A stretch of DNA of 64,000 bases, taken from sequence record PQ287642.1; one strand, 5' to 3'. Each line of letters begins with the position of its first letter. Within the stretch, counting starts at the first letter, position 1. This document shows positions 21,394 to 37,046 of the stretch, one piece after another. Made by a program: the position numbers and the translations under genes. A model generated the notes under the pieces. The model ran no database searches. It was not told the DNA's origin and saw nothing but the letters and a program-made list of their open reading frames with translations.

Positions 21394-22071
21394 TTACCTA
21401 TTTACGATATTGACAGGACGGGGCTTAGAGTTAACCGATATCTTTTTCACTGCCCGACTTGCTACCCAATGACGTGCCCGATCACTAAGATCATTGTCAC
21501 GTGTGAGTATATTCGATTCAGCATTCCAGTGATCGAACCGACGACCAAGTACAGGGTAGTGTGCTTGAGCTAGAACCATGCATTCCAGTGGGCTTAGTTT
21601 GTTCTCAGCCGAGGTGAATACATTATTCAATAGTTCAACTGCTACAGCGCAACCAAAAATGATTGGTTTACGTGCAGGCGTGGAATAATAATTGCTCCTA
21701 AACATGTCATGGGTTGATTCGAACACATGAAGAACATTATCTTCATCGATGAGGATGTATTCGGCATTAGGCGTAAGCAGGTGTTGGAAATTCTTTGCGG
21801 TCTCTGCTAGACTATGTACATCATCTCCTGTCTCCAAGAAATTCAGCCAGCAATGACGATGTTCCGTATCTCCAACCATTGTAAATGCTTTTATAGCTCG
21901 ACCCCAGACTTTAGCTTCCCATTTGTTCTCAGAAGCAAGATAGATCTTGGACTTGTCCAGTTCCACGTAGTATGGTTGTGGTGTACCATCCTCTCCAGTG
22001 ATATCGCTCTGGGTGATCGTAGTAACTCGATCAACCAAAAGATCCTTACCATCCCATATGACAATAGTCAT
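21394..22071 (-). CDS. HslV/proteasome-beta-like Ntn hydrolase
   Basis: Thr after the initiator Met (MTIVIWDGKDLLVDR), SKIY, TMVGD, IIFGC motifs. Confidence 0.7.
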   Translation of the reverse strand: MTIVIWDGKDLLVDRVTTITQSDITGEDGTPQPYYVELDKSKIYLASENKWEAKVWGRAIKAFTMVGDTEHRHCWLNFLETGDDVHSLAETAKNFQHLLTPNAEYILIDEDNVLHVFESTHDMFRSNYYSTPARKPIIFGCAVAVELLNNVFTSAENKLSPLECMVLAQAHYPVLGRRFDHWNAESNILTRDNDLSDRARHWVASRAVKKISVNSKPRPVNIVNR

Positions 22072-22104
22072 TCTTTATATTCTCCTGTTTACAAGCTGAG
22101 ACGG

Positions 22105-22474
22105 AATAAAACCCGCTCCTCAACGGAGCGGGCTATTCGTTAGATTACCTTACCAGAAAGCTGGCCAGCTAAGGCACCGATTACGGGTCGGCACCCATCT
22201 GGTTAGGTAACGCCACTCGGGGATACCCCTCTCAACTGGAGGTAGTAACCGTCGTAACTTCAGATATAAAGACGGCCAAGTCAATATACCTGCTTCGGCT
22301 TGATCCTTTGGCATGGATCGCTGTTAGTCTCTCCGATCTTATGCGGAGAGAGCCCACTTACACCGAAAGCTAGTGGGAATAAGGTGAGGTCACTGCGGCA
22401 CCCTAATATGGCGACGGGGAGCCTTAGGGGAGATGATCCGGGTGACCTCTGTTCTGTTGGGACATTAGTCCTCG
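22105..22474 (-). ncRNA. Candidate structured ncRNA 3 (about 370 nt)
   Basis: At least 8 helices, GC-rich, no credible long ORF; TAC-N14-TATACGAG motif upstream on minus; U-tailed terminator about 22105-22135. Confidence 0.68.
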
Positions 22475-22495
22475 TATATCATTACAACTCAAGTA
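22475..22495 (-). promoter_or_regulatory. TAC-N14-TATA promoter-like motif of ncRNA candidate 3
   Basis: Minus strand GAATACTTG-AGTTGTAATGA-TATACGAG; last 8 nt identical to the tRNA-Thr motif. Confidence 0.62.
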
Positions 22496-22500
22496 TTCTT

Positions 22501-23031
22501 TTACGAGAGTTTAACTTCTACGTCAACTGACTCAAGACCAGTCCCGTTTCTTTTATTAGATCCACGTGCTAGCAGGTAACGAGACCAGGTCTCCGCTTGT
22601 ACTCGGTCAAACTTAAAGTAGATATGCTGCATGATCATCTTACTCAGGTCAGCGATTTCTTTCGACACCATATCAAAGAACAGGTCTTTGTCCATTACGT
22701 CAGCATCATAACGAGCCAGCTCAACGTTGCAATACTGTGCTTTCACTTTATCATAGAACTCAACAGCAGGTTCTTGATGAAAGTAATGGACTTTGTTATC
22801 TTTGATTTCGATACCATGGAGAGTGATCTCGATGTGGTTGCTATGATAGAAATGTTCACGCATAGCTTTATTAAACTCTTCCACCATCTTATCCAGATGG
22901 ATACCTCTAATAACCTCTTTGGCAGTGAATAGATAATTACCATTTGGATCAACGTATTGTTCGCGCGCCCAAAGACAGCACAGACCAATAGGAATGATCT
23001 CAGTGGGGATACGTAGATCACTGAGCTGCAT
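22501..23031 (-). CDS. Hypothetical protein
   Basis: AGGAG SD before MQLSD. Confidence 0.7.
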   Translation of the reverse strand: MQLSDLRIPTEIIPIGLCCLWAREQYVDPNGNYLFTAKEVIRGIHLDKMVEEFNKAMREHFYHSNHIEITLHGIEIKDNKVHYFHQEPAVEFYDKVKAQYCNVELARYDADVMDKDLFFDMVSKEIADLSKMIMQHIYFKFDRVQAETWSRYLLARGSNKRNGTGLESVDVEVKLS

Positions 23032-23485
23032 CGAGTTGCTCCTTCTTTGCATGGATGGATTTGGTTATGATAGTACGTCGTTCGCTTGCTGCATTGGACA
23101 TTATTGTAATTTGTTCTTGCATTTGAGTAAACAGTAAAAGTTCCAACATGGTGAGCAGCATATGCTCAATCCAGAGACGTACACACACCTTGTTCATAGG
23201 GGCAGTGTAATTGAGAGGCTGGACGACCTTAGCAAGTGCGCCAGTCAGCGGGCAGGTAAAGCAGATATGTAGATTCTCACTATCGCTATCTTCTGCCCAG
23301 TGAACATCTTCTCCCTCGCCATGTACCATATTCGTTACATGGACAACCGGCTGATGCTCAAATGCCTCGGGATGAGGAGTCGTGCCTTTCTCCGCGCATT
23401 GATCAAGATAGATATCGCGAATGACAGCCGTAAGCTCAGCTGGCTCAAGAGACGGCATAAAAGGGAATTTAAGAGTTACTGCCAT
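23018..23485 (-). CDS. Hypothetical protein
   Basis: Overlap-coupled; start at MAVT. Confidence 0.7.
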   Translation of the reverse strand: MAVTLKFPFMPSLEPAELTAVIRDIYLDQCAEKGTTPHPEAFEHQPVVHVTNMVHGEGEDVHWAEDSDSENLHICFTCPLTGALAKVVQPLNYTAPMNKVCVRLWIEHMLLTMLELLLFTQMQEQITIMSNAASERRTIITKSIHAKKEQLDAAQ

Positions 23486-23544
23486 TTGAAGGTTCCTATT
23501 GACGAGAGACAAAATAAACCCCTCCCCCGATCAAGGGGAGGGAG

Positions 23545-23710
23545 CTCAAGGTTGGTTGTGACACTAGTCACAGGGATCAGCCGATGGAAGACCCCTAAAG
23601 GTGATGGGACTCTAACCCATCGTGTCGATCGCTGGATTTCAGCCCAGCTTAACCAAATTGTAAAAGAGCTATCGTAAAGGATCAGGAAACGCATATGATA
23701 GTGCGTAACC
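23545..23710. ncRNA. Candidate structured RNA element 4
   Basis: Five helices in a 165-nt intergenic gap; strand unresolved. Confidence 0.45.
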
Positions 23711-23715
23711 TTTAA

Positions 23716-24138
23716 CTAAACGATTACCTCCCTAGGTGGAGGTTCGACCTTTGTCCAATCTAAAGTTAGAGGAGTAGCTATCTCTTCCTTCATTTTGAAC
23801 TCAACGATAGTACGTTGTCCAAAGTGCTTAACACCTAACATGTACCCATCGATGGCAACTTCGTATTGCCTACATAATTTACGGATGTATAACTCAGTGT
23901 CAGTTTCAACACGAGGATCTTCCGCTGTAGGACGATGTTGATGATCCCAGAAAATACAGAACTCTAGTTTCTGCCAGTTACTGAATTCTGGGTTATAGGA
24001 GAATTGATGTAGATGGGCCGCCTCATGTTCCTCTCCAACATAGAACATTAGACTATCGGTGGGCTCTCTAGTCAACTCACTGAAGTCGACTTTTTGCCCA
24101 CCTTTAGTGAGATCGACAACAATGAGTTGAGAAGCCAT
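23716..24138 (-). CDS. Hypothetical protein
   Basis: Coupled to 24138-24839. Confidence 0.75.
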   Translation of the reverse strand: MASQLIVVDLTKGGQKVDFSELTREPTDSLMFYVGEEHEAAHLHQFSYNPEFSNWQKLEFCIFWDHQHRPTAEDPRVETDTELYIRKLCRQYEVAIDGYMLGVKHFGQRTIVEFKMKEEIATPLTLDWTKVEPPPREVIV

Positions 24139-24839
24139 TATGCGCTCCGTCGGCTATCGGTCAGAGAACGGATGGTTCTACTGTCCGCCTCATTACGATT
24201 TTTATTCCGCGTGCGTTCAACTACACGGAATACATTTACATGTTGTTCATCAACTTCATAATTCTCAAACAGTTCACCAAAGTTGTTGGTCAACGAATCT
24301 ACGATCAGTCGTTTGGCATCTACCTCATTGATGTAGTGATAGAGAATAACGCCACGATGATACAGGAACAGAGGATAGTCCTGACCATTGATTCGAACTT
24401 CAGCTGCGAAGCCTCCGTAAGACATGGTGTCTGAATTGATGTCTTCGCGATATACATCCAACTGCACGTTATTGATCGTGTGCATTTGGATCATGTCGTT
24501 TCCATGACCACCAAAGAAGGTGGGACGCTTACGACCAGTTACAACATCTTGGATAGATTCCATCAGTCGTGATACGTCTGTAACGATCTCGATTACATCG
24601 CACAGTTTGTTGATTGCTTCGAGGAAACGAGCTTTCATTTCATCGACCTCGAAACTAGACCATGCCCGAGTTTCGTGGTTGAGAATGTTAACGCCAAACC
24701 AGGCATAACCGTTGTTATGTTTTACCTTTACGCACAGATGCGGTACATCATCCAAACCAGACTGATGATTCAACGTATAATCACTGATGCGTTTCAGGAC
24801 CAGTTGTACGAAGGGAAGATTGATGATCTTTGTCGACAT
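24138..24839 (-). CDS. Hypothetical protein
   Basis: AGGA SD; basic C-tail. Confidence 0.75.
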   Translation of the reverse strand: MSTKIINLPFVQLVLKRISDYTLNHQSGLDDVPHLCVKVKHNNGYAWFGVNILNHETRAWSSFEVDEMKARFLEAINKLCDVIEIVTDVSRLMESIQDVVTGRKRPTFFGGHGNDMIQMHTINNVQLDVYREDINSDTMSYGGFAAEVRINGQDYPLFLYHRGVILYHYINEVDAKRLIVDSLTNNFGELFENYEVDEQHVNVFRVVERTRNKNRNEADSRTIRSLTDSRRSA

Positions 24840-24916
24840 GGAGCTATTCCTATTAATTCTTAAAAGAGATTAGAGGCTACATAAGCACTCACTAGATTAT
24901 GTAGCCTCAGTACATT

Positions 24917-25606
24917 TTAATGACGAGTGAAGCTTTGATTCAAGCATCGACCCATAGGGGAATCGATGGTGAAGTTTTCCATGATCTCGATTGCTTCATC
25001 AATCGACTTGAACTCAGCTACCTCGGTGATAGTGAAACCCCGACATTTCAGGATATCTTCAGCTTGTTCAGTAACGAAGCTCTGAAGAAGCTTGTTCGAA
25101 CGGAAATGGTGAGAGTGTTCGATCTTACCAATGTAGTACATGAACTTGGTCAGTACTTCATATTCCGTGGTATTATTATTACGGGTTTTCGTCAGGAAAT
25201 AATCCGCCGACTTATCATGGCGGATGACGAACACCCTACCATTGGAAGATTTACGTGGCGCAGTTCGTTGCAGAAGTTGATCCCTTTGATCCAACTCTTC
25301 TCGCAGTTGTTCCACATTGATCTCCGGTTTAGTACAGAACCAAAGATCCAGTTTTTGGCCAGCCTTTACTGCTTCATCAATAGCAACCGGCATGTTTGCC
25401 ATACTTCCAGAACGGAAACGTTGCATTACAGCAGAAAATGACGGAGACTCCGCAAGCCATACGTCCCCAGTATCGCGGGTGACCAAAGCATACCAACCCT
25501 TTTTAACTTTAGGTGGGGTTGAGGTATTGGTGAAGTCAGCCATGTATTTCATGATCAGGCGGCGAGTATTCTCGTACGCTGCGGTCTTGGAATCATTAGT
25601 GTACAT
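24917..25606 (-). CDS. Tandem GIY-YIG-like domain protein
   Basis: Two repeats, KGWYALVTRDTGDVWLAES and GRVFVIRHDKSADYFLTKT. Confidence 0.5.
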   Translation of the reverse strand: MYTNDSKTAAYENTRRLIMKYMADFTNTSTPPKVKKGWYALVTRDTGDVWLAESPSFSAVMQRFRSGSMANMPVAIDEAVKAGQKLDLWFCTKPEINVEQLREELDQRDQLLQRTAPRKSSNGRVFVIRHDKSADYFLTKTRNNNTTEYEVLTKFMYYIGKIEHSHHFRSNKLLQSFVTEQAEDILKCRGFTITEVAEFKSIDEAIEIMENFTIDSPMGRCLNQSFTRH

Positions 25607-25681
25607 CAGGTACTCCTCTTAGAATTTGTATTTTCTATTTAATTGAGAAAAGCGGTGGGTTTTCCCCACCGCAATATATCG

Positions 25682-27196
25682 TCAAACGATATCTTTCGGG
25701 ATAGACTCGATGAAGGCTTTAACGTCATTGCGGTTTTCTGCAAACAGAGCTTGCAGATCACAACCGGCAATTGAACGAAACACAATGCCTTTATCTACTT
25801 GAGTAGACGGGAACATCAGCTCGATATAATCACGAACTTCTGCATCCTCCAGCAGACCGATCTCCCATTGATGATCAACACGGCCCTTACGAACCAATGC
25901 TGGATCAAGGTGCTCTGGATGGTTGGTAGTTAGAAGAATCAGCGATCCATCCAACGGAACAACACCATCAAGGGCATTCAACAGGCCAGAGAGTGTTAGG
26001 CCACCCATGCGAGTATCTTCTTCACCTCCATTCGCACGACGGTTATGAAGTTCCCATATGCGAAGCATAATTGGATCATCGGCAATGTATTTAGAAAGGG
26101 GTTCTTCCGGCACCGGTGCATCAAAGCTGTTTCCAATGACATCTCGGTATTGACGCGATTCAGTTGGGTTGTGTTGCTGATACCCAACACTGAAATCTTC
26201 ACCGGGTATATCCCATATACACATGGGTCCGCCGCCATTATCTATCACTCGATAGTTAGTCAACCCCATCTGAGTGATAAGGCTATCCAACTCATCTTCC
26301 TCACCAGCTGTCAGTTTCTTAAGCGAACGATTCTGGACTGCCTTATTGGTATCGAAGTCCTCGATCATCAGAACACTACCAGAAGGCATAGACGTAACAG
26401 CTTTACGAAGCAGTTCATCGGAGATACTGGCTAAAGACAACCAATAAATATTCTTATTAAACGCCGAAGCGATTGCCTTACCGATAGATGTCTTACCAGT
26501 GCCAGGGGGACCTGAAAGCATAGCGCACATTTTGTACGGCATGCCACGGGACTCATACCACTCTCGTCCAGAGAAGAACTCTTCAATCTTACCAATGATC
26601 TCCGCTTTTTGTTTGCGGTTCATGATAACTGTGTTCAGCGCGCGTTTAGTAATCGGGATAGAATCACCCCAACGCAAGCCTTCCCATGGAATGACGCAGA
26701 CTTCTTTATCATCTCCCTTAACACGGAATTCCTCTACAAGATCTAACAGTAGTTGAGTGTTCCTAGTCAAGCCGTGGATCTCAATCTGGAATTTTTCCAT
26801 ATGAGTACCAGAGCTATCCAGCTTAGAGCGATTGAACCAGAAGAAGCGCCCTTTGTAGAAGAAGAAATGGGTACCAAAACCAGCGCCGATATCGGTGCTA
26901 GGAGAGGGACTACCATTCCACATAGAGTTCAACGATAGCTTCCGACTGAACCTGGCAATAGGTTGTTGTTTGAACCACTTCATGAAGGCGATACATTGTT
27001 CTTCATTAGGGCCATGTCCACCATTGTTCATTATCAGGGATGTGACAACCTGATTCCGAATTGCGCTGAACATTTTCTTAGGTAAACTTCGCGCCATCAT
27101 AAGCACCCAGCCACCCAAACCAACACCGACTAAAGATGCGAATGTCGGATTGATCGACATGATCTCTTTGTACCAGGACATAAACTCCTGAATCAT
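25682..27196 (-). CDS. BCS1-like membrane AAA+ ATPase
   Basis: N-terminal TM, GFGTHFFFYKG BCS1_N-like motif, WYESRGMPYK, GPPGTGKT, IEDFD, LTLSGLLNALDG, TTNHPEHLDPALVRKGRVD. Confidence 0.88.
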   Translation of the reverse strand: MIQEFMSWYKEIMSINPTFASLVGVGLGGWVLMMARSLPKKMFSAIRNQVVTSLIMNNGGHGPNEEQCIAFMKWFKQQPIARFSRKLSLNSMWNGSPSPSTDIGAGFGTHFFFYKGRFFWFNRSKLDSSGTHMEKFQIEIHGLTRNTQLLLDLVEEFRVKGDDKEVCVIPWEGLRWGDSIPITKRALNTVIMNRKQKAEIIGKIEEFFSGREWYESRGMPYKMCAMLSGPPGTGKTSIGKAIASAFNKNIYWLSLASISDELLRKAVTSMPSGSVLMIEDFDTNKAVQNRSLKKLTAGEEDELDSLITQMGLTNYRVIDNGGGPMCIWDIPGEDFSVGYQQHNPTESRQYRDVIGNSFDAPVPEEPLSKYIADDPIMLRIWELHNRRANGGEEDTRMGGLTLSGLLNALDGVVPLDGSLILLTTNHPEHLDPALVRKGRVDHQWEIGLLEDAEVRDYIELMFPSTQVDKGIVFRSIAGCDLQALFAENRNDVKAFIESIPKDIV

Positions 27197-28020
27197 TTCT
27201 TTTCCCTCACGTAGCTGAAGTTTCCACGAGTGTATGTATTTTGGATCGGATGCTTCTCGATAATCTCATGGTTGGCCATCGAAAGCATGTTTTCAGTGAG
27301 TGCGGGAATATATTCCCCACCGATCATGTAACCGAGGTTCTTCCTTTCTTCATCGCCAATGTGACGTTGATACAAAGGTTGCTCATAGGTCACAATGAAT
27401 AGACCAGTATAACACTTGAAGATGATAAAGCATTGTCCGCGGAGGAACTTATAACGCCATTGCTGCTTTTTAATTTTCTCAATAGGGAACCGGTATTCTT
27501 TACCACCTTCACGGGAAATACGACGAATCTCACCTGCACATTTCTGTGCCCAGGATCCTTCACCGACGACATAGATTTCTTCGATCAAATCGTCGTAACC
27601 GGGACGGAACTCAGCCTTTCTCCCTCGGGCATTCTTGTAAATTTTGTACGACTGAACTTCAGGACCGAACCAGAATCCTTCAGTGAAGTTTACGACGTGT
27701 GGTGGACGATACACATTACGTGCGATTTTTACATCCACCTTAACGTCGCCATTAAGGGTGAAATCTTCGATATATGCCAGACGCCGCATCAGTTGATGAT
27801 ACGGGTAAAGCTTTTGCGTTTGTTCTCCCGGCAAATGAAAACGAAGAAGATGTGGTTCCACGTTATCGGAAATACGCATCCGATGGTTCTTGGTGAGTTC
27901 ACTCAGATTGAATGACTTAATTTCCTCACGCGCAGCTCGCGCTACATATTTCGCATATTTATTTTCACGATCATCAACGTAAATGTTCATGACAGCTGTG
28001 ACACTTTCATTGAAGTTCAT
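27193..28020 (-). CDS. Hypothetical early protein
   Basis: First ORF after the early promoter at 28057; AAGGA SD. Confidence 0.8.
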   Translation of the reverse strand: MNFNESVTAVMNIYVDDRENKYAKYVARAAREEIKSFNLSELTKNHRMRISDNVEPHLLRFHLPGEQTQKLYPYHQLMRRLAYIEDFTLNGDVKVDVKIARNVYRPPHVVNFTEGFWFGPEVQSYKIYKNARGRKAEFRPGYDDLIEEIYVVGEGSWAQKCAGEIRRISREGGKEYRFPIEKIKKQQWRYKFLRGQCFIIFKCYTGLFIVTYEQPLYQRHIGDEERKNLGYMIGGEYIPALTENMLSMANHEIIEKHPIQNTYTRGNFSYVREKK

Positions 28021-28099: not shown

Positions 28100-28312
28100 C
28101 TAGAACTTCAGTTCATGTTCCCTGGCTTTGAATACCAGAGGACGTGCACGATCCTGAACACTGACCACAAATTGATCAGTCCCAGGAATCTGACCGAGTA
28201 GAGTTAGGGGTTCATCCTTTTCTGCACAGAGATAAGAAGTCCGCCCTTTCAAGGCTGAAGCTTCAATTCGTTCACTAGCACGAACAGTAACACGATAAGT
28301 CATTTCATTCAC
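28100..28312 (-). CDS. Small SH3-like beta protein
   Basis: Pattern shared with 39277 and 39506. Confidence 0.55.
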   Translation of the reverse strand: MNEMTYRVTVRASERIEASALKGRTSYLCAEKDEPLTLLGQIPGTDQFVVSVQDRARPLVFKAREHELKF

Positions 28313-28875
28313 TCAAAGTCAATTACACGCCAACGATCATACCCGCACGCAGCGAGCAAACCGACACGCTCCATTGCAGGCACATAGCCCGACAGTTTGA
28401 CGGTCTTCAATTCTCCGGTTTCCATCCCATGATACAACGATTTCGCAATAGCCGTGTCCGGATACCACTGCGTCAACGGAATCGAAGTATTATAGGTATA
28501 ACCGCAGAACACATCATAAACGTGATGATGTTCATTAATGAACAGACAGTTACCTTGAGCGCCGTTATCGTGATGGGTTTCTTGGATCAACGCGCGGATC
28601 TCACTCAGATGGCCGGAAGTAAAGCTATCGTAAAACCGGCCAACATCATCATCCCAAAGCAGATCACGAATACGACGAACCAGAGTATCTTCACCACCAA
28701 TGATGATACACTTGATTTTCTGTTTGCGTTCTTCCTGCGGGGGATGGTAAGTGTTGTCGTTATTTTCATGGAAGCGAACGACATGGGTATTGAAACCGCA
28801 ATCCTTACGACCGAAGAAAACAACCTGATCGGCAAAAACTGCCTGGGCGAAATGCATTTGTCCTTTCATATTCAC
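28309..28875 (-). CDS. Hypothetical protein, possible degenerate Ntn-fold paralog
   Basis: IKCIIIGG and GNCLFINEHHHVYDVF resemble motifs in 21394-22071. Confidence 0.55.
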   Translation of the reverse strand: MNMKGQMHFAQAVFADQVVFFGRKDCGFNTHVVRFHENNDNTYHPPQEERKQKIKCIIIGGEDTLVRRIRDLLWDDDVGRFYDSFTSGHLSEIRALIQETHHDNGAQGNCLFINEHHHVYDVFCGYTYNTSIPLTQWYPDTAIAKSLYHGMETGELKTVKLSGYVPAMERVGLLAACGYDRWRVIDFE

Positions 28876-29213: not shown

Positions 29214-29419
29214 ACTTCATTTCCTTGTTTGTAATAAACTGATTTACGAGAATGTGGAAGACACGACATATCACGGACGGGGAAGATCCCGTCCGCGTAT
29301 GCTGTTATCACCTGTGGTCTTGCCCGAGTGGGCATCTCAGCTTCAGCTTTCATGGTTACAGGCAGTACGCCTTTACTGAGAATATCATCAACGAGTTGAT
29401 TCCAGGCGATAGAGTACAT
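29210..29419 (-). CDS. Hypothetical protein
   Basis: Coupled ORF. Confidence 0.6.
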   Translation of the reverse strand: MYSIAWNQLVDDILSKGVLPVTMKAEAEMPTRARPQVITAYADGIFPVRDMSCLPHSRKSVYYKQGNEV

Positions 29420-30216
29420 TATTCGGTACCTTGTTCCGGGAGGAATTGGTTAACAGCATCACGATAGTCTCGATCAGCCAGAGCCAACAGAGACCATTTA
29501 GTTGCTACCGGAAGTTCACGGCATTTACTGGTAACCTGATAGATCGTGTAGCCAGCCACACGCTCAGCAATCGGATCCAGACGCCATTGAGTATCGCGGA
29601 TTTGTTTGATCGCTTTCGGAGAAACCAGATCGTAGACAACACCATGGCTGGTAATACCGATGATGGTAACCTTACCAGCAGCTCGACGAGAAATCTCCTC
29701 CATATCCGATTCTTTCAGGAGCCGGCTCCGGCGAACGATGTGTTGCAAATAGCGGCGAGCATTTCGCAGTGCGTTATGTTCACCCATGAAGTAGAACTCA
29801 CGAATGAACAGGTGTTCGTTGTTGTCGGTACGGATTTGAACAGGACGAGCGAACCCATCACCAATACCCAGTGAACAGGTTTCTTCACGGGACATTCCGA
29901 AGAAGTCTACATGGCTCTTACAAAGCAGATACAGATCACCATGCGGTCCAAGGTATACCTTAGTGGCGCTGGAATCTTCTACGTCGACTTCATTGTGTTC
30001 GCAATAGATACCGAGGCCATTCAGAATCAGTTTAGCCTGATGAAGCTGCTCTTCCATATAACGACTGATGTTACCACCAGTGTAAGCGACTACACCAGTC
30101 AGCAAGTTCTCTCCATTACAGGGAATGATTTCCAGATCGTCGAGTTCAGTTAGCTTGAAAACCTGTTTGACCTTCTCCATATCGAAACGGTCGTAGATAC
30201 CAATGAATTTAGCCAT
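29419..30216 (-). CDS. Hypothetical two-repeat protein, possible Ntn-like paralog
   Basis: GAGG SD before MAKF; IREFYFMGE and GKVTIIGITSHGVVYDL motifs. Confidence 0.6.
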   Translation of the reverse strand: MAKFIGIYDRFDMEKVKQVFKLTELDDLEIIPCNGENLLTGVVAYTGGNISRYMEEQLHQAKLILNGLGIYCEHNEVDVEDSSATKVYLGPHGDLYLLCKSHVDFFGMSREETCSLGIGDGFARPVQIRTDNNEHLFIREFYFMGEHNALRNARRYLQHIVRRSRLLKESDMEEISRRAAGKVTIIGITSHGVVYDLVSPKAIKQIRDTQWRLDPIAERVAGYTIYQVTSKCRELPVATKWSLLALADRDYRDAVNQFLPEQGTE

Positions 30217-30458
30217 GTCGCATTTTCCTCTTTTGGTTAAAGTAATTACATACAACGGGGGTGGGGAGTGTATTCTTACTCGGTACAGCTACTCTTGAGG
30301 TAGCTGCTATCCGAGGAACTATTATGCTGGATTGTATTGGGAGTTTAATACTCATTTCGGATGTACCTAAAGGTAGTGTATATTAAAAGAAGAATAAAGA
30401 GGGGTAATCTCCCCCTCATTAGATCAAGGTGATCCAGTATAAAATTCCTTATCTTTTT

Positions 30459-30695
30459 TTAGATAAGGTTATTGCTCCAGGTGAAACCATCAGGAGCATT
30501 CTTACTAAAGAACTCATTACCCCAACCAAAAGAAATCTTAAAGTCTTTAACTACACCTGAATCGGAGTTAATAACTTTATATTCACTGACCTCATCGCTA
30601 TTCTGCAATACAATCAACAGAGCGATAAGATCTTCAGGATTGCCAATACAGAGCTCATGACGCTTGTCATGTCTCTTAAAGATAACTGTCAGCAT
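30459..30695 (-). CDS. Hypothetical protein
   Basis: GAGG SD. Confidence 0.65.
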   Translation of the reverse strand: MLTVIFKRHDKRHELCIGNPEDLIALLIVLQNSDEVSEYKVINSDSGVVKDFKISFGWGNEFFSKNAPDGFTWSNNLI

Positions 30696-30736
30696 ATCAA
30701 ACCTCGTGACGGAATAAAGAGAGCTCCGAAGAGCTC

Positions 30737-31252
30737 TCAGAATTTATACATCAATACGTCTTTCGGATATCGACGCAGAAGAACCTTGAAATCGGTATCC
30801 ATGGGTGCAGTGGTCGAAGTAACAACTTTACCCTTCATAACTTCACGAAGGTCTACCTCTTCAACTGTGACATTGTGGATAGTCTTCCGAGTGGTCCATT
30901 CCGTATCAATGTTGTTATACGGATTATTATTCTTCTGCCATCCATCTGAATCGCGGAAGGGAATAGTGTAAACATAAATCGTCAACTTGAGGAATTCTTC
31001 AAGTGTGATTAATCGATCGGAGAAGATCCATATATCACCATTGATCTCAACGAAGCGATCAGAGTTAAACTCTTTTTCTACAGCACTACCTATTCCAAGT
31101 AGTTCAGCTTCTCGTTTGACAGAGGTAGCATAAAGATTTAGGTTAGACTCAACCCCATCCCACACTGTTAACTTACCAGACCTTTTAAAGCCAGGCATGA
31201 GTTCCTTCTGTTTGTAGAGAGAGCCATGATACAACAGCTCTGGTTTGTCCAT
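30737..31252 (-). CDS. Possible ADP-ribosyltransferase-fold protein
   Basis: LYHGS and LYATS strands as in H-Y type ART folds. Confidence 0.4.
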   Translation of the reverse strand: MDKPELLYHGSLYKQKELMPGFKRSGKLTVWDGVESNLNLYATSVKREAELLGIGSAVEKEFNSDRFVEINGDIWIFSDRLITLEEFLKLTIYVYTIPFRDSDGWQKNNNPYNNIDTEWTTRKTIHNVTVEEVDLREVMKGKVVTSTTAPMDTDFKVLLRRYPKDVLMYKF

Positions 31253-31316
31253 GATGCGTTTCTCTTGATAAACTCATACGATGGATGCCTTTTACAACAT
31301 CCATCGTCTATGAGCC

Positions 31317-31685
31317 TTACACGGCCTTGTAGCTATCATCCATATCGATAGGACTTCCAGAATAAATCTGGAACCTATTGAACAGACTGTCCATGTCTAT
31401 ACGTAGAGCACGGATATTCATGCGGTTATCACTCGGCCGCCCTTCGGACTCCCAAATGGCATGTGCGATCGAAGGAGCTACGTTATTCAGGTAGTCTTCA
31501 ACCTCATGCTCTTCGAGTAACAGAGTATCCTGGAAACCGATACGGGAGATAATAGCATAGTCACGCTGATCGTGTTTTTTAGAACCTTCACGTACCAGGT
31601 AACTCGTGCCAGATCCATTCCTACAACCATTACCATGAATCTCTACAACGAACTTACCGTGCCATTTGTAGTCCATGTGAAGCAC
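31317..31685 (-). CDS. Hypothetical protein
   Basis: GGAG SD. Confidence 0.7.
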   Translation of the reverse strand: MLHMDYKWHGKFVVEIHGNGCRNGSGTSYLVREGSKKHDQRDYAIISRIGFQDTLLLEEHEVEDYLNNVAPSIAHAIWESEGRPSDNRMNIRALRIDMDSLFNRFQIYSGSPIDMDDSYKAV

Positions 31686-31689
31686 TCCT

Positions 31690-32211
31690 TTATTTGATCC
31701 GCTTCATTACAAGAGGGACAGACAAAGTAATCCCATTCGACAGTTTCTCCAGGATGCGGTTTACAGCAGCAGCCTCTTGGGCGTTCTCACAAGGGAGCAT
31801 AATAGCATCCCCGTAGTAATGACTGTGATCCAGACGATCACCCCAGACACTGTTTACGAAACCATATTCCATGCCGTCGTTTGTAGTTACAATCGCAACG
31901 ACATGGTCAGGACCAATCATACCAGTTTCGAGATCACCGACAAGATCCAGCTTCTGTACAACGCCCCGCTGGCAGATCCATACTTCATGATAACGATAAG
32001 GAGTAAGGTCACCACCAGTGCTCGGATCGACTTCGCTAACGAAATACAGAGTACCCCAGTTCATGCTTTGAAACTGAACGGTCTGCTTGTAAGCTTCCCA
32101 TTTGTCTTCTAGACAGTTTACATGTTTGTCGATCCACAAACCCTCGTTATTGAGGCTATCGACGATACCGTCCCGGACACGTACGACATGAAGAGTCTTA
32201 GTCATTTTCAA
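31690..32211 (-). CDS. Hypothetical protein
   Basis: AGGAG SD. Confidence 0.75.
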   Translation of the reverse strand: MKMTKTLHVVRVRDGIVDSLNNEGLWIDKHVNCLEDKWEAYKQTVQFQSMNWGTLYFVSEVDPSTGGDLTPYRYHEVWICQRGVVQKLDLVGDLETGMIGPDHVVAIVTTNDGMEYGFVNSVWGDRLDHSHYYGDAIMLPCENAQEAAAVNRILEKLSNGITLSVPLVMKRIK

Positions 32212-32218
32212 TCTCCTT

Positions 32219-32665
32219 TTAATAGTTTCTGAATCGATCGTAAGTGACTTTTTCTTTAAGCCGATCGATAATGTAATTACGACCTTGAGTGAACTGAAGT
32301 TTTTGATGACTGTCCAACTCGCTCCATTCGGTCAAGCGAGGAAGATCTGAAACCTGATCATATTTCGCCTTATTGAGCTTCTTGATCATGTCCCAGATAT
32401 AGTCACCTTCAATGAACCAGCGGAGACCAGTGAACGTATCCACGTCAGTTAGCTTGACCCCATAGAGGCTAAGATCAACTCCTGCTTCTTCTGCCATCTT
32501 ACAGGTCTTTTTATAGGCATCGAATACCGCACGAAGGCGATGGTCGAAACCATCACCCTCGCACATTTCGATAGCTACGATCAACATCGGAAACGTATCA
32601 CTGTAGAACTTGATCAGCTTCCGGGTCGCTGCTTCCAGCGCTTTCTGCTTTTGCGTTTTTGCCAT
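32219..32665 (-). CDS. Helical protein, paralog of 32598-33110
   Basis: Shared A.E.G....GV...W....WD.I..LN pattern. Confidence 0.7.
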   Translation of the reverse strand: MAKTQKQKALEAATRKLIKFYSDTFPMLIVAIEMCEGDGFDHRLRAVFDAYKKTCKMAEEAGVDLSLYGVKLTDVDTFTGLRWFIEGDYIWDMIKKLNKAKYDQVSDLPRLTEWSELDSHQKLQFTQGRNYIIDRLKEKVTYDRFRNY

Positions 32666-33110
32666 TTTTAATATCCCTAAATTCACGAAGGAATTCTTTG
32701 TGTTCATCGTAATGTTTAAAAGCCAGTGCAAGCACATTAAGTGCCTTCCCGAAAGCGCGTCGTTCACTGACGGGATATTCTGACCAGATTTTAAACTTGT
32801 TCTTTGGTAGTTGAAAGTTCAGATGTACGATCGTGTCCCAATAGGAATACGAAAGCAACCAGCTCGCATGTTCATAGACAGTGTGGTTAGCAGGGTCTAC
32901 ACCCATCACATCCATGTAGATGCCGTTTTCTTTCGCCACGCACAGAAGATTCCTGTGACAATGGAGAAGGTCAGTCATCACATCTACGTCTGGTATACCT
33001 TTACCAGAATAAGAATGGAACTTACGAACCATTACCATCCAGGCCTCGAATGCTCTTTTAAATGCAGCAGTCTGCCGACGCGTCTTCGTTGATTTCTTAG
33101 TCTCCATCAT
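32598..33110 (-). CDS. Helical protein, paralog of 32219-32665
   Basis: Shared pattern as above. Confidence 0.7.
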   Translation of the reverse strand: MMETKKSTKTRRQTAAFKRAFEAWMVMVRKFHSYSGKGIPDVDVMTDLLHCHRNLLCVAKENGIYMDVMGVDPANHTVYEHASWLLSYSYWDTIVHLNFQLPKNKFKIWSEYPVSERRAFGKALNVLALAFKHYDEHKEFLREFRDIKNGKNAKAESAGSSDPEADQVLQ

Positions 33111-33690
33111 GATGCTCCACTCGACCAGAAAGGTTATATTCGACCTTGAACTGCATTCTTACCGGAGCGTAAGTTTGCGGATATTCTGGAATACTTTTGT
33201 ATTCACCTTCAAAACAGGTGAACAACATTTCACCCGTATTGACTTTGTAGATACTTGGCATGTAGTGTACGTACCACAGCTTGTCATCTTTTAGAACATA
33301 ATGACCAAAACTGTTTTCACGACGAGCATCTTTTATGACCTGGATATTCTTACCAAGTACGTCTCCGATGAAACCGAGGTGATCATCCAGATCCATACCC
33401 TCGGAATCACCATTCATGACTAAAGCTTCAGGAGACAAATACATCTTTCGAATGGTGGCATTAACCGGTTCGAGATAACCTTTCTCTACACCCGACATCC
33501 ATTTGTTGAAAGAACCAATCCGCTTGGGATCGTCTGTACCTACCAGGATAGTGGTATCGTCATAAACGATATTAATCAAATCGTAGCCAGCTGCACGATT
33601 ACGTTGAATGATCCAACCATGATAGTTGACCCGCAGAAAAGCCATTGCATGTAGTTTGCCTCGGAGGGCTTCCAGAGTAAGCTTTTTCAT
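33097..33690 (-). CDS. Hypothetical protein
   Basis: AAGGA SD; weak resemblance to the Ntn-like set. Confidence 0.7.
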   Translation of the reverse strand: MKKLTLEALRGKLHAMAFLRVNYHGWIIQRNRAAGYDLINIVYDDTTILVGTDDPKRIGSFNKWMSGVEKGYLEPVNATIRKMYLSPEALVMNGDSEGMDLDDHLGFIGDVLGKNIQVIKDARRENSFGHYVLKDDKLWYVHYMPSIYKVNTGEMLFTCFEGEYKSIPEYPQTYAPVRMQFKVEYNLSGRVEHHDGD

Positions 33691-33699
33691 TTTAGTTCC

Positions 33700-34161
33700 T
33701 TAGTAAACGCCATTGATGATGGCCTCGCGGAAACGAGCCCACTCAGTTTGACCAACTACCAGCTCTCTTTCTTTTGGACGCCAGAGGTGGTCGCCGCAAT
33801 CAAGACCTAGGTAAAGCATATTAGCTTTCCATTGGTTCCGATGGTTACGCAGTGTAGCCGACAGACTGAACTCACGCATAACTTCATTAACATCCAAATG
33901 AACCAGAGTTTCACTGGTCATTCCGCTCATGCTGATACCAAGAACCTCACGAACACGAATCAGATCATCCGTCATCGAACGCCAGGCTTGGATATGTGCG
34001 TAATACTCATCTGGAGTCATGCTGTTTTTATAGTTCGATGCTCCGGGCGTCATGGACATCCAACTCGGAAATTGGATAGACATGTAGTAAAGCCAGTCGC
34101 TATCGTATCGCAGTTCGTTCAGTTTTTCCTGGATAATGGGGTTGGTGGTTGCTTTAGCCAT
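33700..34161 (-). CDS. Helical protein, paralog of 34161-34616
   Basis: KL.EL..D...Y....FP..M...P.G..NYK and W.....L.L......W.....E. Confidence 0.75.
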   Translation of the reverse strand: MAKATTNPIIQEKLNELRYDSDWLYYMSIQFPSWMSMTPGASNYKNSMTPDEYYAHIQAWRSMTDDLIRVREVLGISMSGMTSETLVHLDVNEVMREFSLSATLRNHRNQWKANMLYLGLDCGDHLWRPKERELVVGQTEWARFREAIINGVY

Positions 34162-34616
34162 TAGACTACTACCTCGCGTAGATAAGCAATGAGTTCCTCC
34201 TGGAACTCAGCCCAGACAGATTTCATATCAACCCCTTCAGGTTGACGTGCACGCCATACATCGGAGTCTGCCGGTAGTTCCAGCGCTTTACAGATATCAC
34301 GCCATTGGTGAACATACTTACGGACACCAGCCGGAGTGGAAAGAACCACCAGAGAATCGATGGTAGCCAATTTAACGAAAGGTTCGTCTTCAATCGGCAT
34401 ACCACCCCAACTGACATCAATCTCACGAACGATGTCATTCAGTTCAGCCAGGCGATGATGGAACTCGACAACACCTTCACGACCAGGTTTGTAGTTCAGA
34501 CCAGACGGCATGGTACGCATCATGGCCGGGAACAGTTCGGTCAGCACAGCGTAGTAACGCTCGTCCTTGGCCAGATCACGGAGTTTGTTTTCGAGCATGG
34601 AATTAACTTTAGGCAT
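34161..34616 (-). CDS. Helical protein, paralog of 33700-34161
   Basis: Shared pattern as above. Confidence 0.75.
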   Translation of the reverse strand: MPKVNSMLENKLRDLAKDERYYAVLTELFPAMMRTMPSGLNYKPGREGVVEFHHRLAELNDIVREIDVSWGGMPIEDEPFVKLATIDSLVVLSTPAGVRKYVHQWRDICKALELPADSDVWRARQPEGVDMKSVWAEFQEELIAYLREVVV

Positions 34617-34642
34617 TTCTATTTCCTCAGGGCTTGATGGAA

Positions 34643-35161
34643 TTAAGCAGTTGTAACTTTAGGTTGGACGGGTTTGATAATTTCGTTATAGGACATCCAG
34701 TTGTAGGTGGTGAAGAACTTCGGATGACTTACTTTCAACCATTTAACGAACTTATTCAGTTCTTCTTCCCGAACGAAACCATTACCGTAAAGATCACGGC
34801 GGCACGGATCACCCTCGGGCATTTCAGCGCAGTGGGCATCATGCATTTGTCGGATCAACTCCAACAAATTTTCTTTACGTCCAATCAGGAACGTAAATAC
34901 ATGCAGCGGATCCCAACTTGTCATGGTGGTCCACATGGATTTGTTGGCAGTCAGATTTTCGAGCTTGAGCTCTTTCACCTTATCCATCACCAATTTGCAT
35001 TGGACCAACATCCCTTCAAGTTGTTCGTTCGGATCACCGTCAATAATCCAGTGAGAACCGCCAGGCATATAACCGCAGAAGGTGTAAAGATTGTCACGCA
35101 GATACGCATGACGACCGCGTTCCAAAGCTTCAGCCTTCTTTTGTTCCTTAGATTTAGCCAT
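34643..35161 (-). CDS. Hypothetical protein
   Basis: GAGG SD before MAKSK. Confidence 0.7.
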   Translation of the reverse strand: MAKSKEQKKAEALERGRHAYLRDNLYTFCGYMPGGSHWIIDGDPNEQLEGMLVQCKLVMDKVKELKLENLTANKSMWTTMTSWDPLHVFTFLIGRKENLLELIRQMHDAHCAEMPEGDPCRRDLYGNGFVREEELNKFVKWLKVSHPKFFTTYNWMSYNEIIKPVQPKVTTA

Positions 35162-35162
35162 C

Positions 35163-35612
35163 TTAGTAACCCTCGTCAGATTTGAATGTGCGTTCAGGAC
35201 TGAACACGTATTTGATATCGTCAATCACAGCTGTGATATAGACCTGATATTCTTTTGAAATAGATTCCATCAACTCTACCGATACGTACTCCGCAGTTTG
35301 AATACGGTTGTAAGCATCGTCAAGCATGTCATCATCATGACCGAACAACAAACCGAGATCAGTAGAATTGATTACCGGGTAATGTACCCAGTTACGGATA
35401 TACGGTTTACCAAGATGAATTACTTGAATAACTTCATCATGTTCCTGTTTCTTTTTCTTGTTTACGTATTTGACGTGACGTTCGATGAAAGCATAGATAC
35501 CGGAACCGTTGGTGTTACCGTATGCAGCCAGTTCGAAGCCGTATTTATGGTCGATGTTATTGGTGTCACGACGCCATTGAGGAATGAAAGCACTCATTTG
35601 AATTCGTACCAT
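35163..35612 (-). CDS. Hypothetical protein
   Basis: Operon packing. Confidence 0.7.
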   Translation of the reverse strand: MVRIQMSAFIPQWRRDTNNIDHKYGFELAAYGNTNGSGIYAFIERHVKYVNKKKKQEHDEVIQVIHLGKPYIRNWVHYPVINSTDLGLLFGHDDDMLDDAYNRIQTAEYVSVELMESISKEYQVYITAVIDDIKYVFSPERTFKSDEGY

Positions 35613-36109
35613 CCGTTAATGATCAGATCAAGATCCTTCCAGAACAACTGGGAGAATTCATCGAGGGTATCGGCGTCCTCCAGTCCATCGAGATCAACGT
35701 CAGGAGACTTAACGAAACTCATACCAGTTTCGGGATAGATATCTGTGATGACCCTAGTACTGTTGTCAGAGTAATCTCGGGTGAATGTGGTTACCGAATG
35801 GTCAGTAAAAAGAGCGACACAGATATCGCCTTTATGATTCCCCAGTTCATCGGTAAGAGCATCGATGATATCGACATCGATGATATTTCCACCAAAGTCA
35901 AGAATTTTTAGACGATTACGGACAAGTTCATTTGCTGCCCAATCGCCAGACTGGATAACCAAAAGCTTCGCGGTTTCACCGCGATAGGTTACAAGATCTT
36001 CCTCGCCTTCTCGCCGCATACCCCAATCGAAACGGATGTCCGTATCTTCATTGGCTTTATCACGTGCGATGATTACACCCTGCTTACCATAAACTACGAT
36101 ATGTTTCAT
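35594..36109 (-). CDS. Possible degenerate Ntn-fold paralog
   Basis: HIVVYGKQGVIIARD, LLVIQSGDWAANELV, ICVALFTDHSVTTF; no N-terminal Thr. Confidence 0.55.
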   Translation of the reverse strand: MKHIVVYGKQGVIIARDKANEDTDIRFDWGMRREGEEDLVTYRGETAKLLVIQSGDWAANELVRNRLKILDFGGNIIDVDIIDALTDELGNHKGDICVALFTDHSVTTFTRDYSDNSTRVITDIYPETGMSFVKSPDVDLDGLEDADTLDEFSQLFWKDLDLIINGWYEFK

Positions 36110-36126
36110 TTGTATATTCCTTTTGG

Positions 36127-36507
36127 TTAATTGAAACGGCTATATTCAACCCACCATTCTTCGTCGCGAATGTGGAGAGTAGTGCACAGGTCGATAATTG
36201 CATCGAAAAGCAGAACAGTCGTTGGATTGCGTCCAATGAACTGACGTTGGAAAGAAGTGAAGATAGCGATGATGTTATCGCCATCTTCTGTGTCAAACAA
36301 GATCTGATCATGAACAAGAGACATGTCATAGAAATCAATCTTAGACAATGCCTCTAGAAGAACTTCCATGCGAGTGAGGGCGGTATTCAGTTCGAATACA
36401 ATCAGCGGACTGCAACCACGATCCTTATGGTGATGCATGCGATGTTTGGAGATACGTTCGACGATAAGCCGGGGAAGACCTTGTACATCTACGAGTTTAC
36501 GTTTCAT
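36127..36507 (-). CDS. Hypothetical protein
   Basis: GAGG SD. Confidence 0.7.
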   Translation of the reverse strand: MKRKLVDVQGLPRLIVERISKHRMHHHKDRGCSPLIVFELNTALTRMEVLLEALSKIDFYDMSLVHDQILFDTEDGDNIIAIFTSFQRQFIGRNPTTVLLFDAIIDLCTTLHIRDEEWWVEYSRFN

Positions 36508-36563
36508 TTTTGATTTTCCTCTTTACGAAATAGAAGCCCTCCCGAAGGAGGGCAATTATGTTG

Positions 36564-37043
36564 TTACAGGTTGATAACGGTTACGAACTCGAATACACGA
36601 CAGAGTTCTTCGTCACGGTAAGCTTGACGGAAAGGTTTACCTTCTTTACCACAATACGGGAAGAACAGTTTGCGATTCTCCGTATCGCCAAACCAGAAGG
36701 TAGTGGTATTGGAATCGATGATCCCGTGTGTAGCCACATCCCGGATGTTCTGGAATACATGGACCACTTTGTCGGCGATAACGCGAAGTTCCACACCATG
36801 CTCGGTCATCATGGCCAGAATGTCTTCACGACTGTAGTCGGTCCGTTCGTTGTTGGTCATGATCTCGTGAACCAGAGAACGCTTCTCTTTGTCACCGAAG
36901 CAGATGCATACCAGATGAACAGAAGCACCTTCGATCTTCATGCCATTGATAGGTTTAAACAGAACAATGTTCTCGTATTTGAAATCGTTGGTGACGATCA
37001 ATACCGAACTATCACGTACAGCGATACCCAGGCTATAGGCCAT
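36564..37043 (-). CDS. Possible degenerate Ntn-fold paralog
   Basis: YSLGIAVRDSSVLIV, LVCICFGD, ELRVIADKVVHVFQ. Confidence 0.55.
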   Translation of the reverse strand: MAYSLGIAVRDSSVLIVTNDFKYENIVLFKPINGMKIEGASVHLVCICFGDKEKRSLVHEIMTNNERTDYSREDILAMMTEHGVELRVIADKVVHVFQNIRDVATHGIIDSNTTTFWFGDTENRKLFFPYCGKEGKPFRQAYRDEELCRVFEFVTVINL

Positions 37044-37046
37044 GAT

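What the first reader, a model, noticed from the sequence alone, without database searches (positions are those of the whole stretch)
21394..37043. Dispersed HslV/proteasome-beta-like family: one catalytic member plus several degenerate paralogs
Seen in sequence: 21394-22071 keeps Thr at mature position 1 plus Asp (VDR) and Lys (SKIY), a hydrophobic strand ending in Gly (AFTMVGD), the hairpin EYILIDEDNVLHVF and IIFGC. The same order of motifs recurs without the N-terminal Thr in 36564-37043 (LVCICFGD; ELRVIADKVVHVF), 35594-36109 (LLVIQSGD; ICVALFTDHSVTTF), 28309-28875 (IKCIIIGG; CLFINEHHHVYDV) and apparently twice in 29419-30216. Weaker candidates are 33097-33690 and 31690-32211. Established: proteasomes pair active beta subunits with inactive paralogs, and HslV/proteasome rings work with AAA+ ATPases. 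Inference: a phage hetero-oligomeric protease, or decoys that poison host HslUV or defence proteases. A AAA+ gene lies inside the interval.
Basis: inference. Interest (0 to 1): 0.7.

Follow-up and report, generated by a model that had tools for sequence, protein, structure and literature searches.

The report
Proteasome-like proteins in a jumbo phage
This stretch of a 302-kb Pseudomonas jumbo phage encodes at least two unannotated proteins predicted to fold like proteasome/HslV protease subunits, one with the full catalytic residue set and one degenerate; the five other proposed copies could not be confirmed.

Summary
The window is nt 1-64000 of Pseudomonas phage HHBS36_1, a phiKZ-like jumbo phage of the genus Pawinskivirus. 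All ORFs named in the finding exist on the minus strand and are annotated as hypothetical.

- **21394-22071** (orthologue of phiKZ gp289 and PhiPA3 gp355): AlphaFold2 model with pLDDT 84. The top 50 PDB matches are all 20S proteasome beta subunits. Thr/Ser at position 2, D14, K42, G67 and G140 are conserved in 19 of 19 relatives.
- **36564-37043** (orthologue of phiKZ gp016): pLDDT 90. All 50 top PDB matches have the Ntn fold, 46 of them proteasome-family (Anbu, 20S subunits, connectase). The nucleophile position is Ala here and is not conserved, so this copy is degenerate.

The other five ORFs have no detectable similarity to either family, to each other or to any library.

The AAA+ gene (25682-27196) is a membrane-anchored BCS1-type ATPase, not HslU-like.

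The hetero-oligomer and decoy ideas remain untested. Proteasome homologues in phages are already known (PPH, AAH, Noxifer gp241), so these are new members of a known kind.

The parts
21394..22071 (-). 225-aa proteasome-beta/HslV-like Ntn-fold protein with a complete catalytic-type residue set (T2, D14, K42, G67, G140). It is the orthologue of phiKZ gp289 and PhiPA3 gp355.
   Evidence: AF2 pLDDT 83.8. Foldseek PDB top 50 are all 20S beta subunits. BFVD hits include phage proteins named 'proteasome subunit beta'. Residues are conserved in 19 of 19 relatives. Orthology.
36564..37043 (-). 159-aa compact Ntn-fold protein, orthologue of phiKZ gp016 and PhiPA3 gp331. The active site is degenerate: A2 in this phage, and S4 alternates with N in orthologues. 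D20 and G50 are invariant; K36 is present in 7 of 8.
   Evidence: AF2 pLDDT 90.1. Foldseek PDB top 50 are all Ntn-fold: Anbu, 20S subunits and connectase (46), plus PurO and MTH1020. Alignment. Third-codon-position bias shows the minus strand is the coding strand.
25682..27196 (-). 504-aa BCS1-type AAA+ ATPase with an N-terminal hydrophobic segment, orthologue of phiKZ gp286 and PhiPA3 gp347. It is a context gene and is not shown to work with the Ntn-fold proteins.
   Evidence: Pfam BCS1_N 8.9e-13 and AAA 1.5e-16. PDB mitochondrial BCS1 at 6.1e-39. In Noxifer-like phages it is flanked at -5 kb and +4 kb by two canonical-looking Ntn paralogs.
35594..36109 (-). 171-aa unverified candidate. It has the collinear motif pattern but no nucleophile. 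It is an ORFan restricted to Pawinskivirus.
   Evidence: Pattern present. tblastn finds only the 8 Pawinskivirus-type records. No profile signal. Not folded.
28309..28875 (-). 186/188-aa unverified candidate. It has the collinear motif pattern and is an ORFan restricted to Pawinskivirus.
   Evidence: Pattern present. tblastn. The only signal is a weak hhalign hit, in register at the C-terminus, to the Noxifer-type family (prob 6.5%). Not folded.
29419..30216 (-). 265-aa unverified candidate. The pattern occurs once, in the N-terminal part, and there is no internal duplication.
   Evidence: No profile signal. Not folded.
33097..33690 (-). 197-aa weak candidate with no support.
   Evidence: Lacks the pattern. 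No profile signal.
31690..32211 (-). 171/173-aa weak candidate with no support. It matches phrog_24987 (function unknown) and has an orthologue in phiKZ-like phages.

Best explanation
The interval holds two separate genes for proteins of the proteasome-beta/HslV (Ntn-hydrolase) fold.

**21394-22071.** This is most likely an active N-terminal-threonine hydrolase.
- Removal of the initiator Met would expose Thr as residue 1, with no propeptide needed.
- The Asp, Lys and oxyanion-Gly equivalents are invariant across the family.
- I infer that it acts as a peptidase or amidase on its own, like the partner-less relatives Anbu and BPH, rather than with the nearby ATPase.
- Its PhiPA3 orthologue sits at the phage bouquets, where filled capsids and tails gather. 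That suggests a virion-associated or late-assembly role.

**36564-37043.** It keeps the fold, the Asp and the Gly, but has lost a conserved nucleophile (Ala2 in this phage). It is therefore most likely a non-catalytic binding or scaffolding protein.

**The rest of the interval.** The other five ORFs are genus-restricted or poorly conserved ORFans of unknown fold. Three of them (35594, 28309, 29419) share a collinear motif pattern and may be further degenerate copies. The AAA+ gene is a membrane-anchored BCS1-type ATPase with no demonstrated link to the Ntn proteins.

**Shown versus inferred.** Shown: fold predictions, residue conservation, orthology and ATPase type. Inferred: catalytic activity, oligomeric state, substrate and timing.
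For: - AF2 and Foldseek for both proteins.
- T/S2, D14, K42, G67 and G140 are conserved in 19 of 19 sequences from three subfamilies.
- The secondary-structure order of both models follows the S1-S5, H1-H2, S6-S9, H3-H4, S10 scheme. The conserved residues sit before S1, at the end of S2, before S4, at the end of S5 and at the end of S9.
- hhalign links the 21394 family to two Noxifer-type families at 87% and 91% probability. One of these is annotated 'peptidase HslV family' in RefSeq.
- PhiPA3 gp355 (YP_009217434.1) was labelled by ChmA-miniTurboID in 3 of 3 trials, and its GFP fusion localises to phage bouquets (PMC10643120).
- N-terminal variation in the gp016 family.
- The ATPase is BCS1-type.
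Against: - Foldseek E-values are modest (about 1e-3) and TM-scores are about 0.4-0.6. The models are predictions from shallow alignments (15 and 7 sequences), and two of the five models of the second protein had pLDDT near 70.
- No sequence library recognises either protein: Pfam, NCBIfam, PDB sequences, and hhalign against an HslV profile.
- The 21394 family lacks the secondary Ser129 and Asp166-x-x-Ser169 type residues that the Noxifer-type paralogs keep (GSG, DPHSS), so activity could be altered.
- No model coordinates were available, so I could not check active-site geometry.
- Gene proximity to the AAA+ recurs in Noxifer-like phages, so a functional link cannot be excluded.
Confidence: 0.65

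Rival explanations
1. One reading: a phage hetero-oligomeric proteasome-like particle. One active subunit (21394-22071) would co-assemble with several inactive paralogs (36564, 35594, 28309, 29419 and others), fed by the AAA+ ATPase in the interval.
For: - Two proteins of the fold are confirmed, one catalytic-looking and one degenerate.
- Three more ORFs share the collinear pattern, which is absent from 48 other ORFs.
- Noxifer-like jumbo phages carry two Ntn paralogs flanking the orthologous AAA+.
Against: - The two confirmed proteins have no detectable similarity to each other.
- The genes are scattered among unrelated ORFans, not adjacent. In phiKZ, gp016 lies at 8.4 kb and gp289 at 263 kb on the 280-kb map.
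- 35594, 28309 and 29419 are absent from phiKZ and PhiPA3, which keep the 21394 and 36564 families.
- The ATPase is BCS1-type with a membrane anchor, not HslU/Clp/PAN-like.
- No assembly prediction was possible.
Confidence: 0.12
2. Decoy model: the degenerate Ntn-fold protein or proteins mimic a host subunit (HslV or Anbu of P. aeruginosa). They would poison host ATP-dependent proteolysis or a protease-based defence.
For: - The best PDB matches of the 36564-37043 model are Anbu, including P. aeruginosa Anbu (5lox).
- The nucleophile is lost in this phage.
- phiKZ gp016 protein is detected in infected cells (PMC12571901).
Against: - Sequence identity to Anbu or HslV is only 9-14%, so the match is at fold level only.
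- There is no evidence of interface conservation.
- Several orthologues keep S/T at position 2, which a pure decoy would not need.
Confidence: 0.08
3. 21394-22071 is an Ntn enzyme but not a protease. It could be an amidase, a transpeptidase or ligase (connectase-like), or a small-molecule hydrolase (PurO-like).
For: - The Ntn superfamily includes ligases and non-peptidase hydrolases, and connectase and PurO appear among the fold matches.
- The family lacks the Ser129, Asp166 and Ser169 type support residues.
- It has a family-specific, strongly conserved C-terminal block (F179, D180, L195, R198).
Against: The top 50 structural matches of this model are all 20S beta subunits, and the Thr/Asp/Lys/Gly set is the peptidase set.
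Confidence: 0.12
4. Artefact: the fold assignments are false positives of AlphaFold and Foldseek on ORFans, and the motifs are chance.
For: E-values are about 1e-3 and TM-scores about 0.5. The alignments are shallow, and no sequence-profile method confirms the assignment.
Against: - Both models are confident (pLDDT 84 and 90).
- All 100 top PDB hits belong to one fold class.
- The invariant residues fall exactly on catalytic positions. For 36564-37043, numbering from S4 gives D17, K33 and G47 exactly.
- A homologous Noxifer protein is independently annotated as HslV family.
Confidence: 0.03

Closest known systems
HslV and 20S proteasome beta subunits (MEROPS family T1)
   Same: - Predicted alpha-beta-beta-alpha sandwich.
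- N-terminal Thr directly after the initiator Met, as in HslV.
- Asp, Lys and oxyanion Gly in the canonical order.
- For 36564-37043, the canonical 1/17/33/47 spacing, counted from S4.
   Different: - No match to Pfam Proteasome or to any PDB sequence.
- The 21394 family has a shorter N-terminal hairpin, an insertion between S3 and S4, no GSG or DxxS support residues, and a conserved C-terminal extension.
- There is no HslU-type partner gene.
- Ring assembly is unknown.
Anbu, BPH and connectase (partner-less bacterial and archaeal proteasome homologues)
   Same: Stand-alone proteasome-like proteins with no dedicated unfoldase. Anbu is the best structural match of the 36564-37043 model.
   Different: Those are cellular proteins of 190-240 aa or more. 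36564-37043 has 159 aa and lacks a conserved nucleophile.
PPH, AAH and RPC, the phage-borne proteasome homologues of Fuchs, Alva and Lupas 2021 (PMC8665760)
   Same: Proteasome-like proteins encoded by tailed phages. PPH is small (about 140 aa), and RPC has a C-terminal extension.
   Different: PPH and RPC are described as lacking helix H2, whereas both models here have H1 and H2. That survey does not mention phiKZ-like phages in the passages I read. I had no PPH, AAH or RPC sequences, so membership could not be tested.
Pseudomonas phage Noxifer gp241 ('peptidase HslV family', RefSeq) and its paralog gp227
   Same: Homologous to the 21394 family by profile-profile comparison (87% and 91%). Same neighbourhood around the BCS1-like AAA+. 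T2, D14, K and G conserved.
   Different: The Noxifer-type proteins keep the GSG and DPHSS motifs, and there are two catalytic-looking copies per genome. The window phage has one catalytic-looking copy plus the unrelated-in-sequence gp016-type protein.
Erwinia phage RAY gp116 (HslU-like ATPase, nuclear-localised; PMC10299810)
   Same: A Chimalliviridae accessory gene from the HslUV system.
   Different: It is the ATPase half (Pfam AAA_2), not the peptidase. The window phage has no such ATPase in this interval.

Membership tests
Proteasome-like Ntn hydrolases (HslV, 20S beta, Anbu, BPH, PPH) | Four-layer alpha-beta-beta-alpha sandwich with S1-S10 and H1-H4 in the canonical order | tested here: met
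   21394-22071. 36564-37043. These are predicted structures only.
Proteasome-like Ntn hydrolases (HslV, 20S beta, Anbu, BPH, PPH) | Thr or Ser nucleophile at the mature N-terminus | tested here: met
   21394-22071 family: T (17) or S (2) at position 2 in 19 of 19 sequences. Met removal is inferred from the known specificity of methionine aminopeptidase. For 36564-37043 this feature is NOT met: A2 in the window, and the structural position 1 (S4) alternates with N in orthologues.
Proteasome-like Ntn hydrolases (HslV, 20S beta, Anbu, BPH, PPH) | Asp17, Lys33 and Gly47 equivalents | tested here: met
   21394 family: D14, K42 and G67 are invariant. 36564 family: D20 and G50 are invariant, and K36 is present in 7 of 8 (E in PhiPA3). 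Positions relative to the strands agree with the models. 3-D geometry was not checked because no coordinates were available.
Proteasome-like Ntn hydrolases (HslV, 20S beta, Anbu, BPH, PPH) | Match to the curated sequence models (Pfam Proteasome PF00227, NCBIfam HslV) | tested here: not met
   No hit for any of the seven ORFs, nor for the Noxifer-type paralogs. Profile searches against PDB sequences were also negative.
Proteasome-like Ntn hydrolases (HslV, 20S beta, Anbu, BPH, PPH) | Ring or helical homo- or hetero-oligomer, and peptidase activity | not testable with these tools
   No multimer prediction and no experiment was available.
HslUV two-component protease | Cognate HslU/Clp-type AAA+ unfoldase encoded with the peptidase | tested here: not met
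   The only AAA+ in the interval is BCS1-type, and five genes separate it from 21394-22071.
PPH/RPC (Fuchs et al. 2021) | About 140 aa, helix H2 absent | tested here: not met
   Both models show two helices between S5 and S6: H72-81 and H85-94 in one, H52-64 and H72-82 in the other. The family description is from PMC8665760. A direct sequence comparison was not possible.
   All-against-all BLASTP, hhalign of family profiles and a merged superfamily HMM gave nothing above background. The test has little power, because the two fold-confirmed families also fail to detect each other.

The most novel reading that the evidence does not exclude
phiKZ-like jumbo phages may build their own multi-subunit proteasome-like particle. 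It would combine one active Thr1 subunit (the gp289/gp355 family) with several fast-evolving inactive subunits of the same fold (gp016-type plus genus-specific ORFans such as 35594, 28309 and 29419). This would be a viral analogue of the 20S arrangement of active and inactive subunits, possibly packaged in or assembled next to virions.
Probability: 0.1. Interest if true: 0.85.

Novelty: new member of a known kind. Interest (0 to 1): 0.5.

Why it matters
phiKZ, PhiPA3 and their relatives are the model nucleus-forming phages, and most of their genes have no assigned function. This work gives a fold and a testable catalytic hypothesis to phiKZ gp289 / PhiPA3 gp355, a protein already seen at the phage bouquets with 'no predicted function'. 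It also gives a fold to phiKZ gp016. That opens simple experiments such as a T2A mutant and active-site probes.

The result also suggests that proteasome-like proteins are more common in jumbo phages than sequence annotation shows, and are sometimes present in several copies. If further copies are confirmed, the question of a virus-encoded compartmentalised protease becomes directly testable.

Tried and rejected
- **Curated libraries and PDB sequences.** Pfam, PHROGs and NCBIfam scans of all candidates gave no informative hit. Neither did PDB sequence searches with single sequences and with a family profile.
- **HslV control.** An HslV profile built from 80 genome loci was too uniform (85-99% identity). 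hhalign did not link it even to the fold-confirmed 21394 family. Negative hhalign results therefore say little about fold.
- **Profile tests of the candidates.** Local and global hhalign, and a merged superfamily HMM, were run against 55 window ORFs and 1100 shuffles. No remaining candidate stands out.
- **False leads.**
  - The 12-bit global score of 35594 against HslV is an out-of-register alignment.
  - The 5-bit hit of window 2231-2725 belongs to a protein with a GASIPR motif like that of DUF1353.
  - RAY gp117 and gp118, next to its HslU-like gp116, show nothing HslV-like.
- **Deepening the alignments.**
  - IMG/VR scans returned only known phages.
  - The metagenome scan with A3 found nothing.
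  - Alignments A6 and A2 were too divergent to scan with.
- **Internal duplication** of 29419-30216: rejected.
- **Model coordinates** are not exposed, so active-site geometry and structure-based alignment could not be done.

Full report
**Identity and layout**

The window is nt 1-64000 of Pseudomonas phage HHBS36_1 (PQ287642.1, 302 kb). It is 98-99% identical to PS119XW and PA1C (genus Pawinskivirus) and 81% identical to HPP-Temi. From about 20.7 kb to beyond 40 kb the genes run on the minus strand. Nearly all are annotated as 'hypothetical protein'. The block is syntenic with PhiPA3 gp328-356 and with the phiKZ gp27x-290 region.

**No sequence-level support for a family**

- All-against-all BLASTP of 31 ORFs in the interval finds one significant pair only.
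- Pfam, PHROGs and NCBIfam give no proteasome or HslV hit for any candidate.

**21394-22071**

- An exhaustive HMMER search found 15 relatives. tblastn identifies PhiPA3 gp355, phiKZ gp289 and genes in Viktualia, D6 and Psa21 as orthologues.
- In the alignment, M1, G8, D14, K42, G67, G140 and D180 are invariant, and position 2 is Thr or Ser.
- AlphaFold2 with this alignment gave pLDDT 83.8 and pTM 0.81. The strand and helix order is that expected of an Ntn sandwich.
- Foldseek against the PDB returned only 20S proteasome beta subunits in the top 50 (best E 7.9e-4, probability 1.0, TM 0.39-0.60).
- Against BFVD it returned 19 hits at E <= 1e-3. These are mostly uncharacterised jumbo-phage proteins, plus two phage proteins named as proteasome subunits.
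- The conserved residues sit where Thr1, Asp17, Lys33, Gly47 and the Gly after S9 sit in proteasome subunits: before S1, at the end of S2, before S4, at the end of S5 and at the end of S9.
- Thr follows the initiator Met directly, so Met removal should expose it. This rests on the established specificity of methionine aminopeptidase.

**Relatives with two copies**

I used the AAA+ gene as an anchor in IMG/VR. Noxifer (L011) and a related 284-kb contig (L010) each carry two canonical-looking copies, about 5 kb upstream and about 4 kb downstream of the orthologous AAA+. Both begin MTT and carry GSG and DPHSS motifs.

hhalign links the 21394 family to both copies, at 87% (E 3.7e-6) and 91% (E 1.2e-6). 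Across all 19 sequences, T/S2, D14, K42, G67 and G140 hold. RefSeq annotates the upstream Noxifer copy (gp241) as 'peptidase HslV family'.

**36564-37043**

- It is 72% identical to phiKZ gp016 and 30% identical to PhiPA3 gp331.
- AlphaFold2 with seven sequences gave pLDDT 90.1 and pTM 0.84.
- All 50 top PDB matches are Ntn-fold proteins, 46 of them proteasome-family. They are Anbu (best E 3.2e-3, probability 1.0, TMq 0.53), 20S subunits and connectase, plus PurO and MTH1020.
- Counting from S4, the residue just before strand S1 in the model, D20, K36 and G50 fall at positions 17, 33 and 47.
- However, S4 alternates with Asn among orthologues. Position 2 is Ser or Thr in most, but Ala in this phage. 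K36 is Glu in PhiPA3.
- So the fold is kept but a conserved nucleophile is not.
- The HHBS36_1 record annotates the opposite strand here (CDS0063, 36558-37067). Substitutions against PA7 and HPP-Temi concentrate at the third codon position of the minus-strand frame (80 of 131 and 58 of 76). The plus-strand ORF is broken by stops in PA7. The minus-strand gene is therefore the real one.

**The two confirmed proteins are not demonstrably paralogs**

hhalign between their families gives a probability of 0.4%.

**The five remaining candidates**

- 35594-36109 and 28309-28875 occur only in Pawinskivirus.
- Profile-profile comparisons of every ORF family in the interval against the 21394, gp016, Noxifer-type and HslV profiles show nothing above background. 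A merged superfamily HMM, scored against 55 window ORFs and 1100 shuffles, shows nothing either.
- These tests have no power at this divergence. The two fold-confirmed families do not find each other, and the 21394 family does not find HslV.
- The claimed double copy in 29419-30216 is not supported.
It occurs in none of 48 other ORFs and in 4.2% of shuffles. It is circular for four of the five and proves nothing about fold.
- Both tested candidates were positive. My estimate is therefore roughly even odds for 35594 and 28309, lower for 29419, and low for 33097 and 31690.

**The ATPase**

25682-27196 matches Pfam BCS1_N (8.9e-13) and AAA (1.5e-16), and mitochondrial BCS1 structures at 6e-39. 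It begins with a hydrophobic segment. It is not an HslU/Clp/PAN-type unfoldase, and five genes separate it from 21394-22071. Its recurring neighbourhood with Ntn genes in Noxifer-like phages is noted but unexplained.

**Literature**

- Fuchs, Alva and Lupas 2021 (PMC8665760) describe many proteasome homologues, including the phage-borne PPH and AAH. PPH and RPC lack helix H2, which both models here have.
- Enustun et al. 2023 (PMC10643120) detected PhiPA3 gp355 (YP_009217434.1, the orthologue of 21394-22071) by ChmA proximity labelling. A GFP fusion localised to the phage bouquets, and the protein was listed with no predicted function.
- phiKZ gp016 is detected by proteomics in infected cells (PMC12571901).
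- RAY gp116, cited as HslUV-like, is the ATPase component.
- I found no paper that assigns a proteasome-like fold to phiKZ gp289, phiKZ gp016 or PhiPA3 gp355.

**Verdict**

- The interval contains at least two proteasome-like Ntn-fold genes, one with a complete catalytic-type residue set and one degenerate.
- Up to three more candidates cannot be judged here.
- Hetero-oligomer assembly, coupling to the AAA+ and decoy action remain speculation.
- Proteasome homologues in phages are already known, so this is a new member of a known kind. It is of moderate interest because it annotates proteins of the main model jumbo phages.

Noticed in passing
window 36558-37067 (+) versus 36564-37043 (-): The HHBS36_1 record annotates the plus-strand ORF (CDS0063). 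Codon-position substitution bias, stops in PA7, orthology to PHIKZ016 and a confident fold all show that the minus-strand ORF is the real gene. HPP-Temi has a similar plus-strand call (CDS0071).
   Followed up: yes
window 33700-34161 and 34161-34616 (-): Tandem paralogs (26% identity, E 1.8e-10). They are the only significant intra-interval pair. There are also two copies in PhiPA3 (L003 7756-8226 and 8241-8738) and one in phiKZ-like T2P. Function unknown.
   Followed up: partly
window 25682-27196 (-): The BCS1-type AAA+ ATPase has an N-terminal hydrophobic segment. A stretch of about 110 aa (roughly residues 284-395) lies between the two matched parts of the AAA domain. The gene is conserved in phiKZ (gp286), PhiPA3 (gp347), Noxifer (gp231) and IMG/VR jumbo phages. 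A BCS1-like translocase in nucleus-forming phages may deserve its own study.
   Followed up: partly
window 30737-31252 (-): This is the most conserved small gene of the block: 59-68% identity to PhiPA3 gp341, Viktualia and T2P, with clear homologues in L010 and L011 (phmmer 4.9e-54 and 2.7e-45). In L010 and L011 it lies immediately upstream of the AAA+. It has no Pfam match.
   Followed up: no
L010 4923-5528 and 14717-15334; L011 4946-5551 and 14347-14973 (Noxifer gp241 and gp227): Two canonical-looking HslV-like paralogs per genome flank the BCS1-like AAA+. Only one of them is annotated (as HslV family) in RefSeq.
   Followed up: partly
window 2231-2725 (-): 164-aa ORF with a GASIPR motif like that of DUF1353. 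It gave a spurious weak hit to the merged Ntn HMM.
   Followed up: partly
window 38334-38693 (-): 119-aa gene annotated as an endonuclease. It is conserved in PhiPA3, phiKZ-like and Noxifer-like phages at the upstream edge of this block, and has no Pfam hit at E <= 0.01.
   Followed up: no
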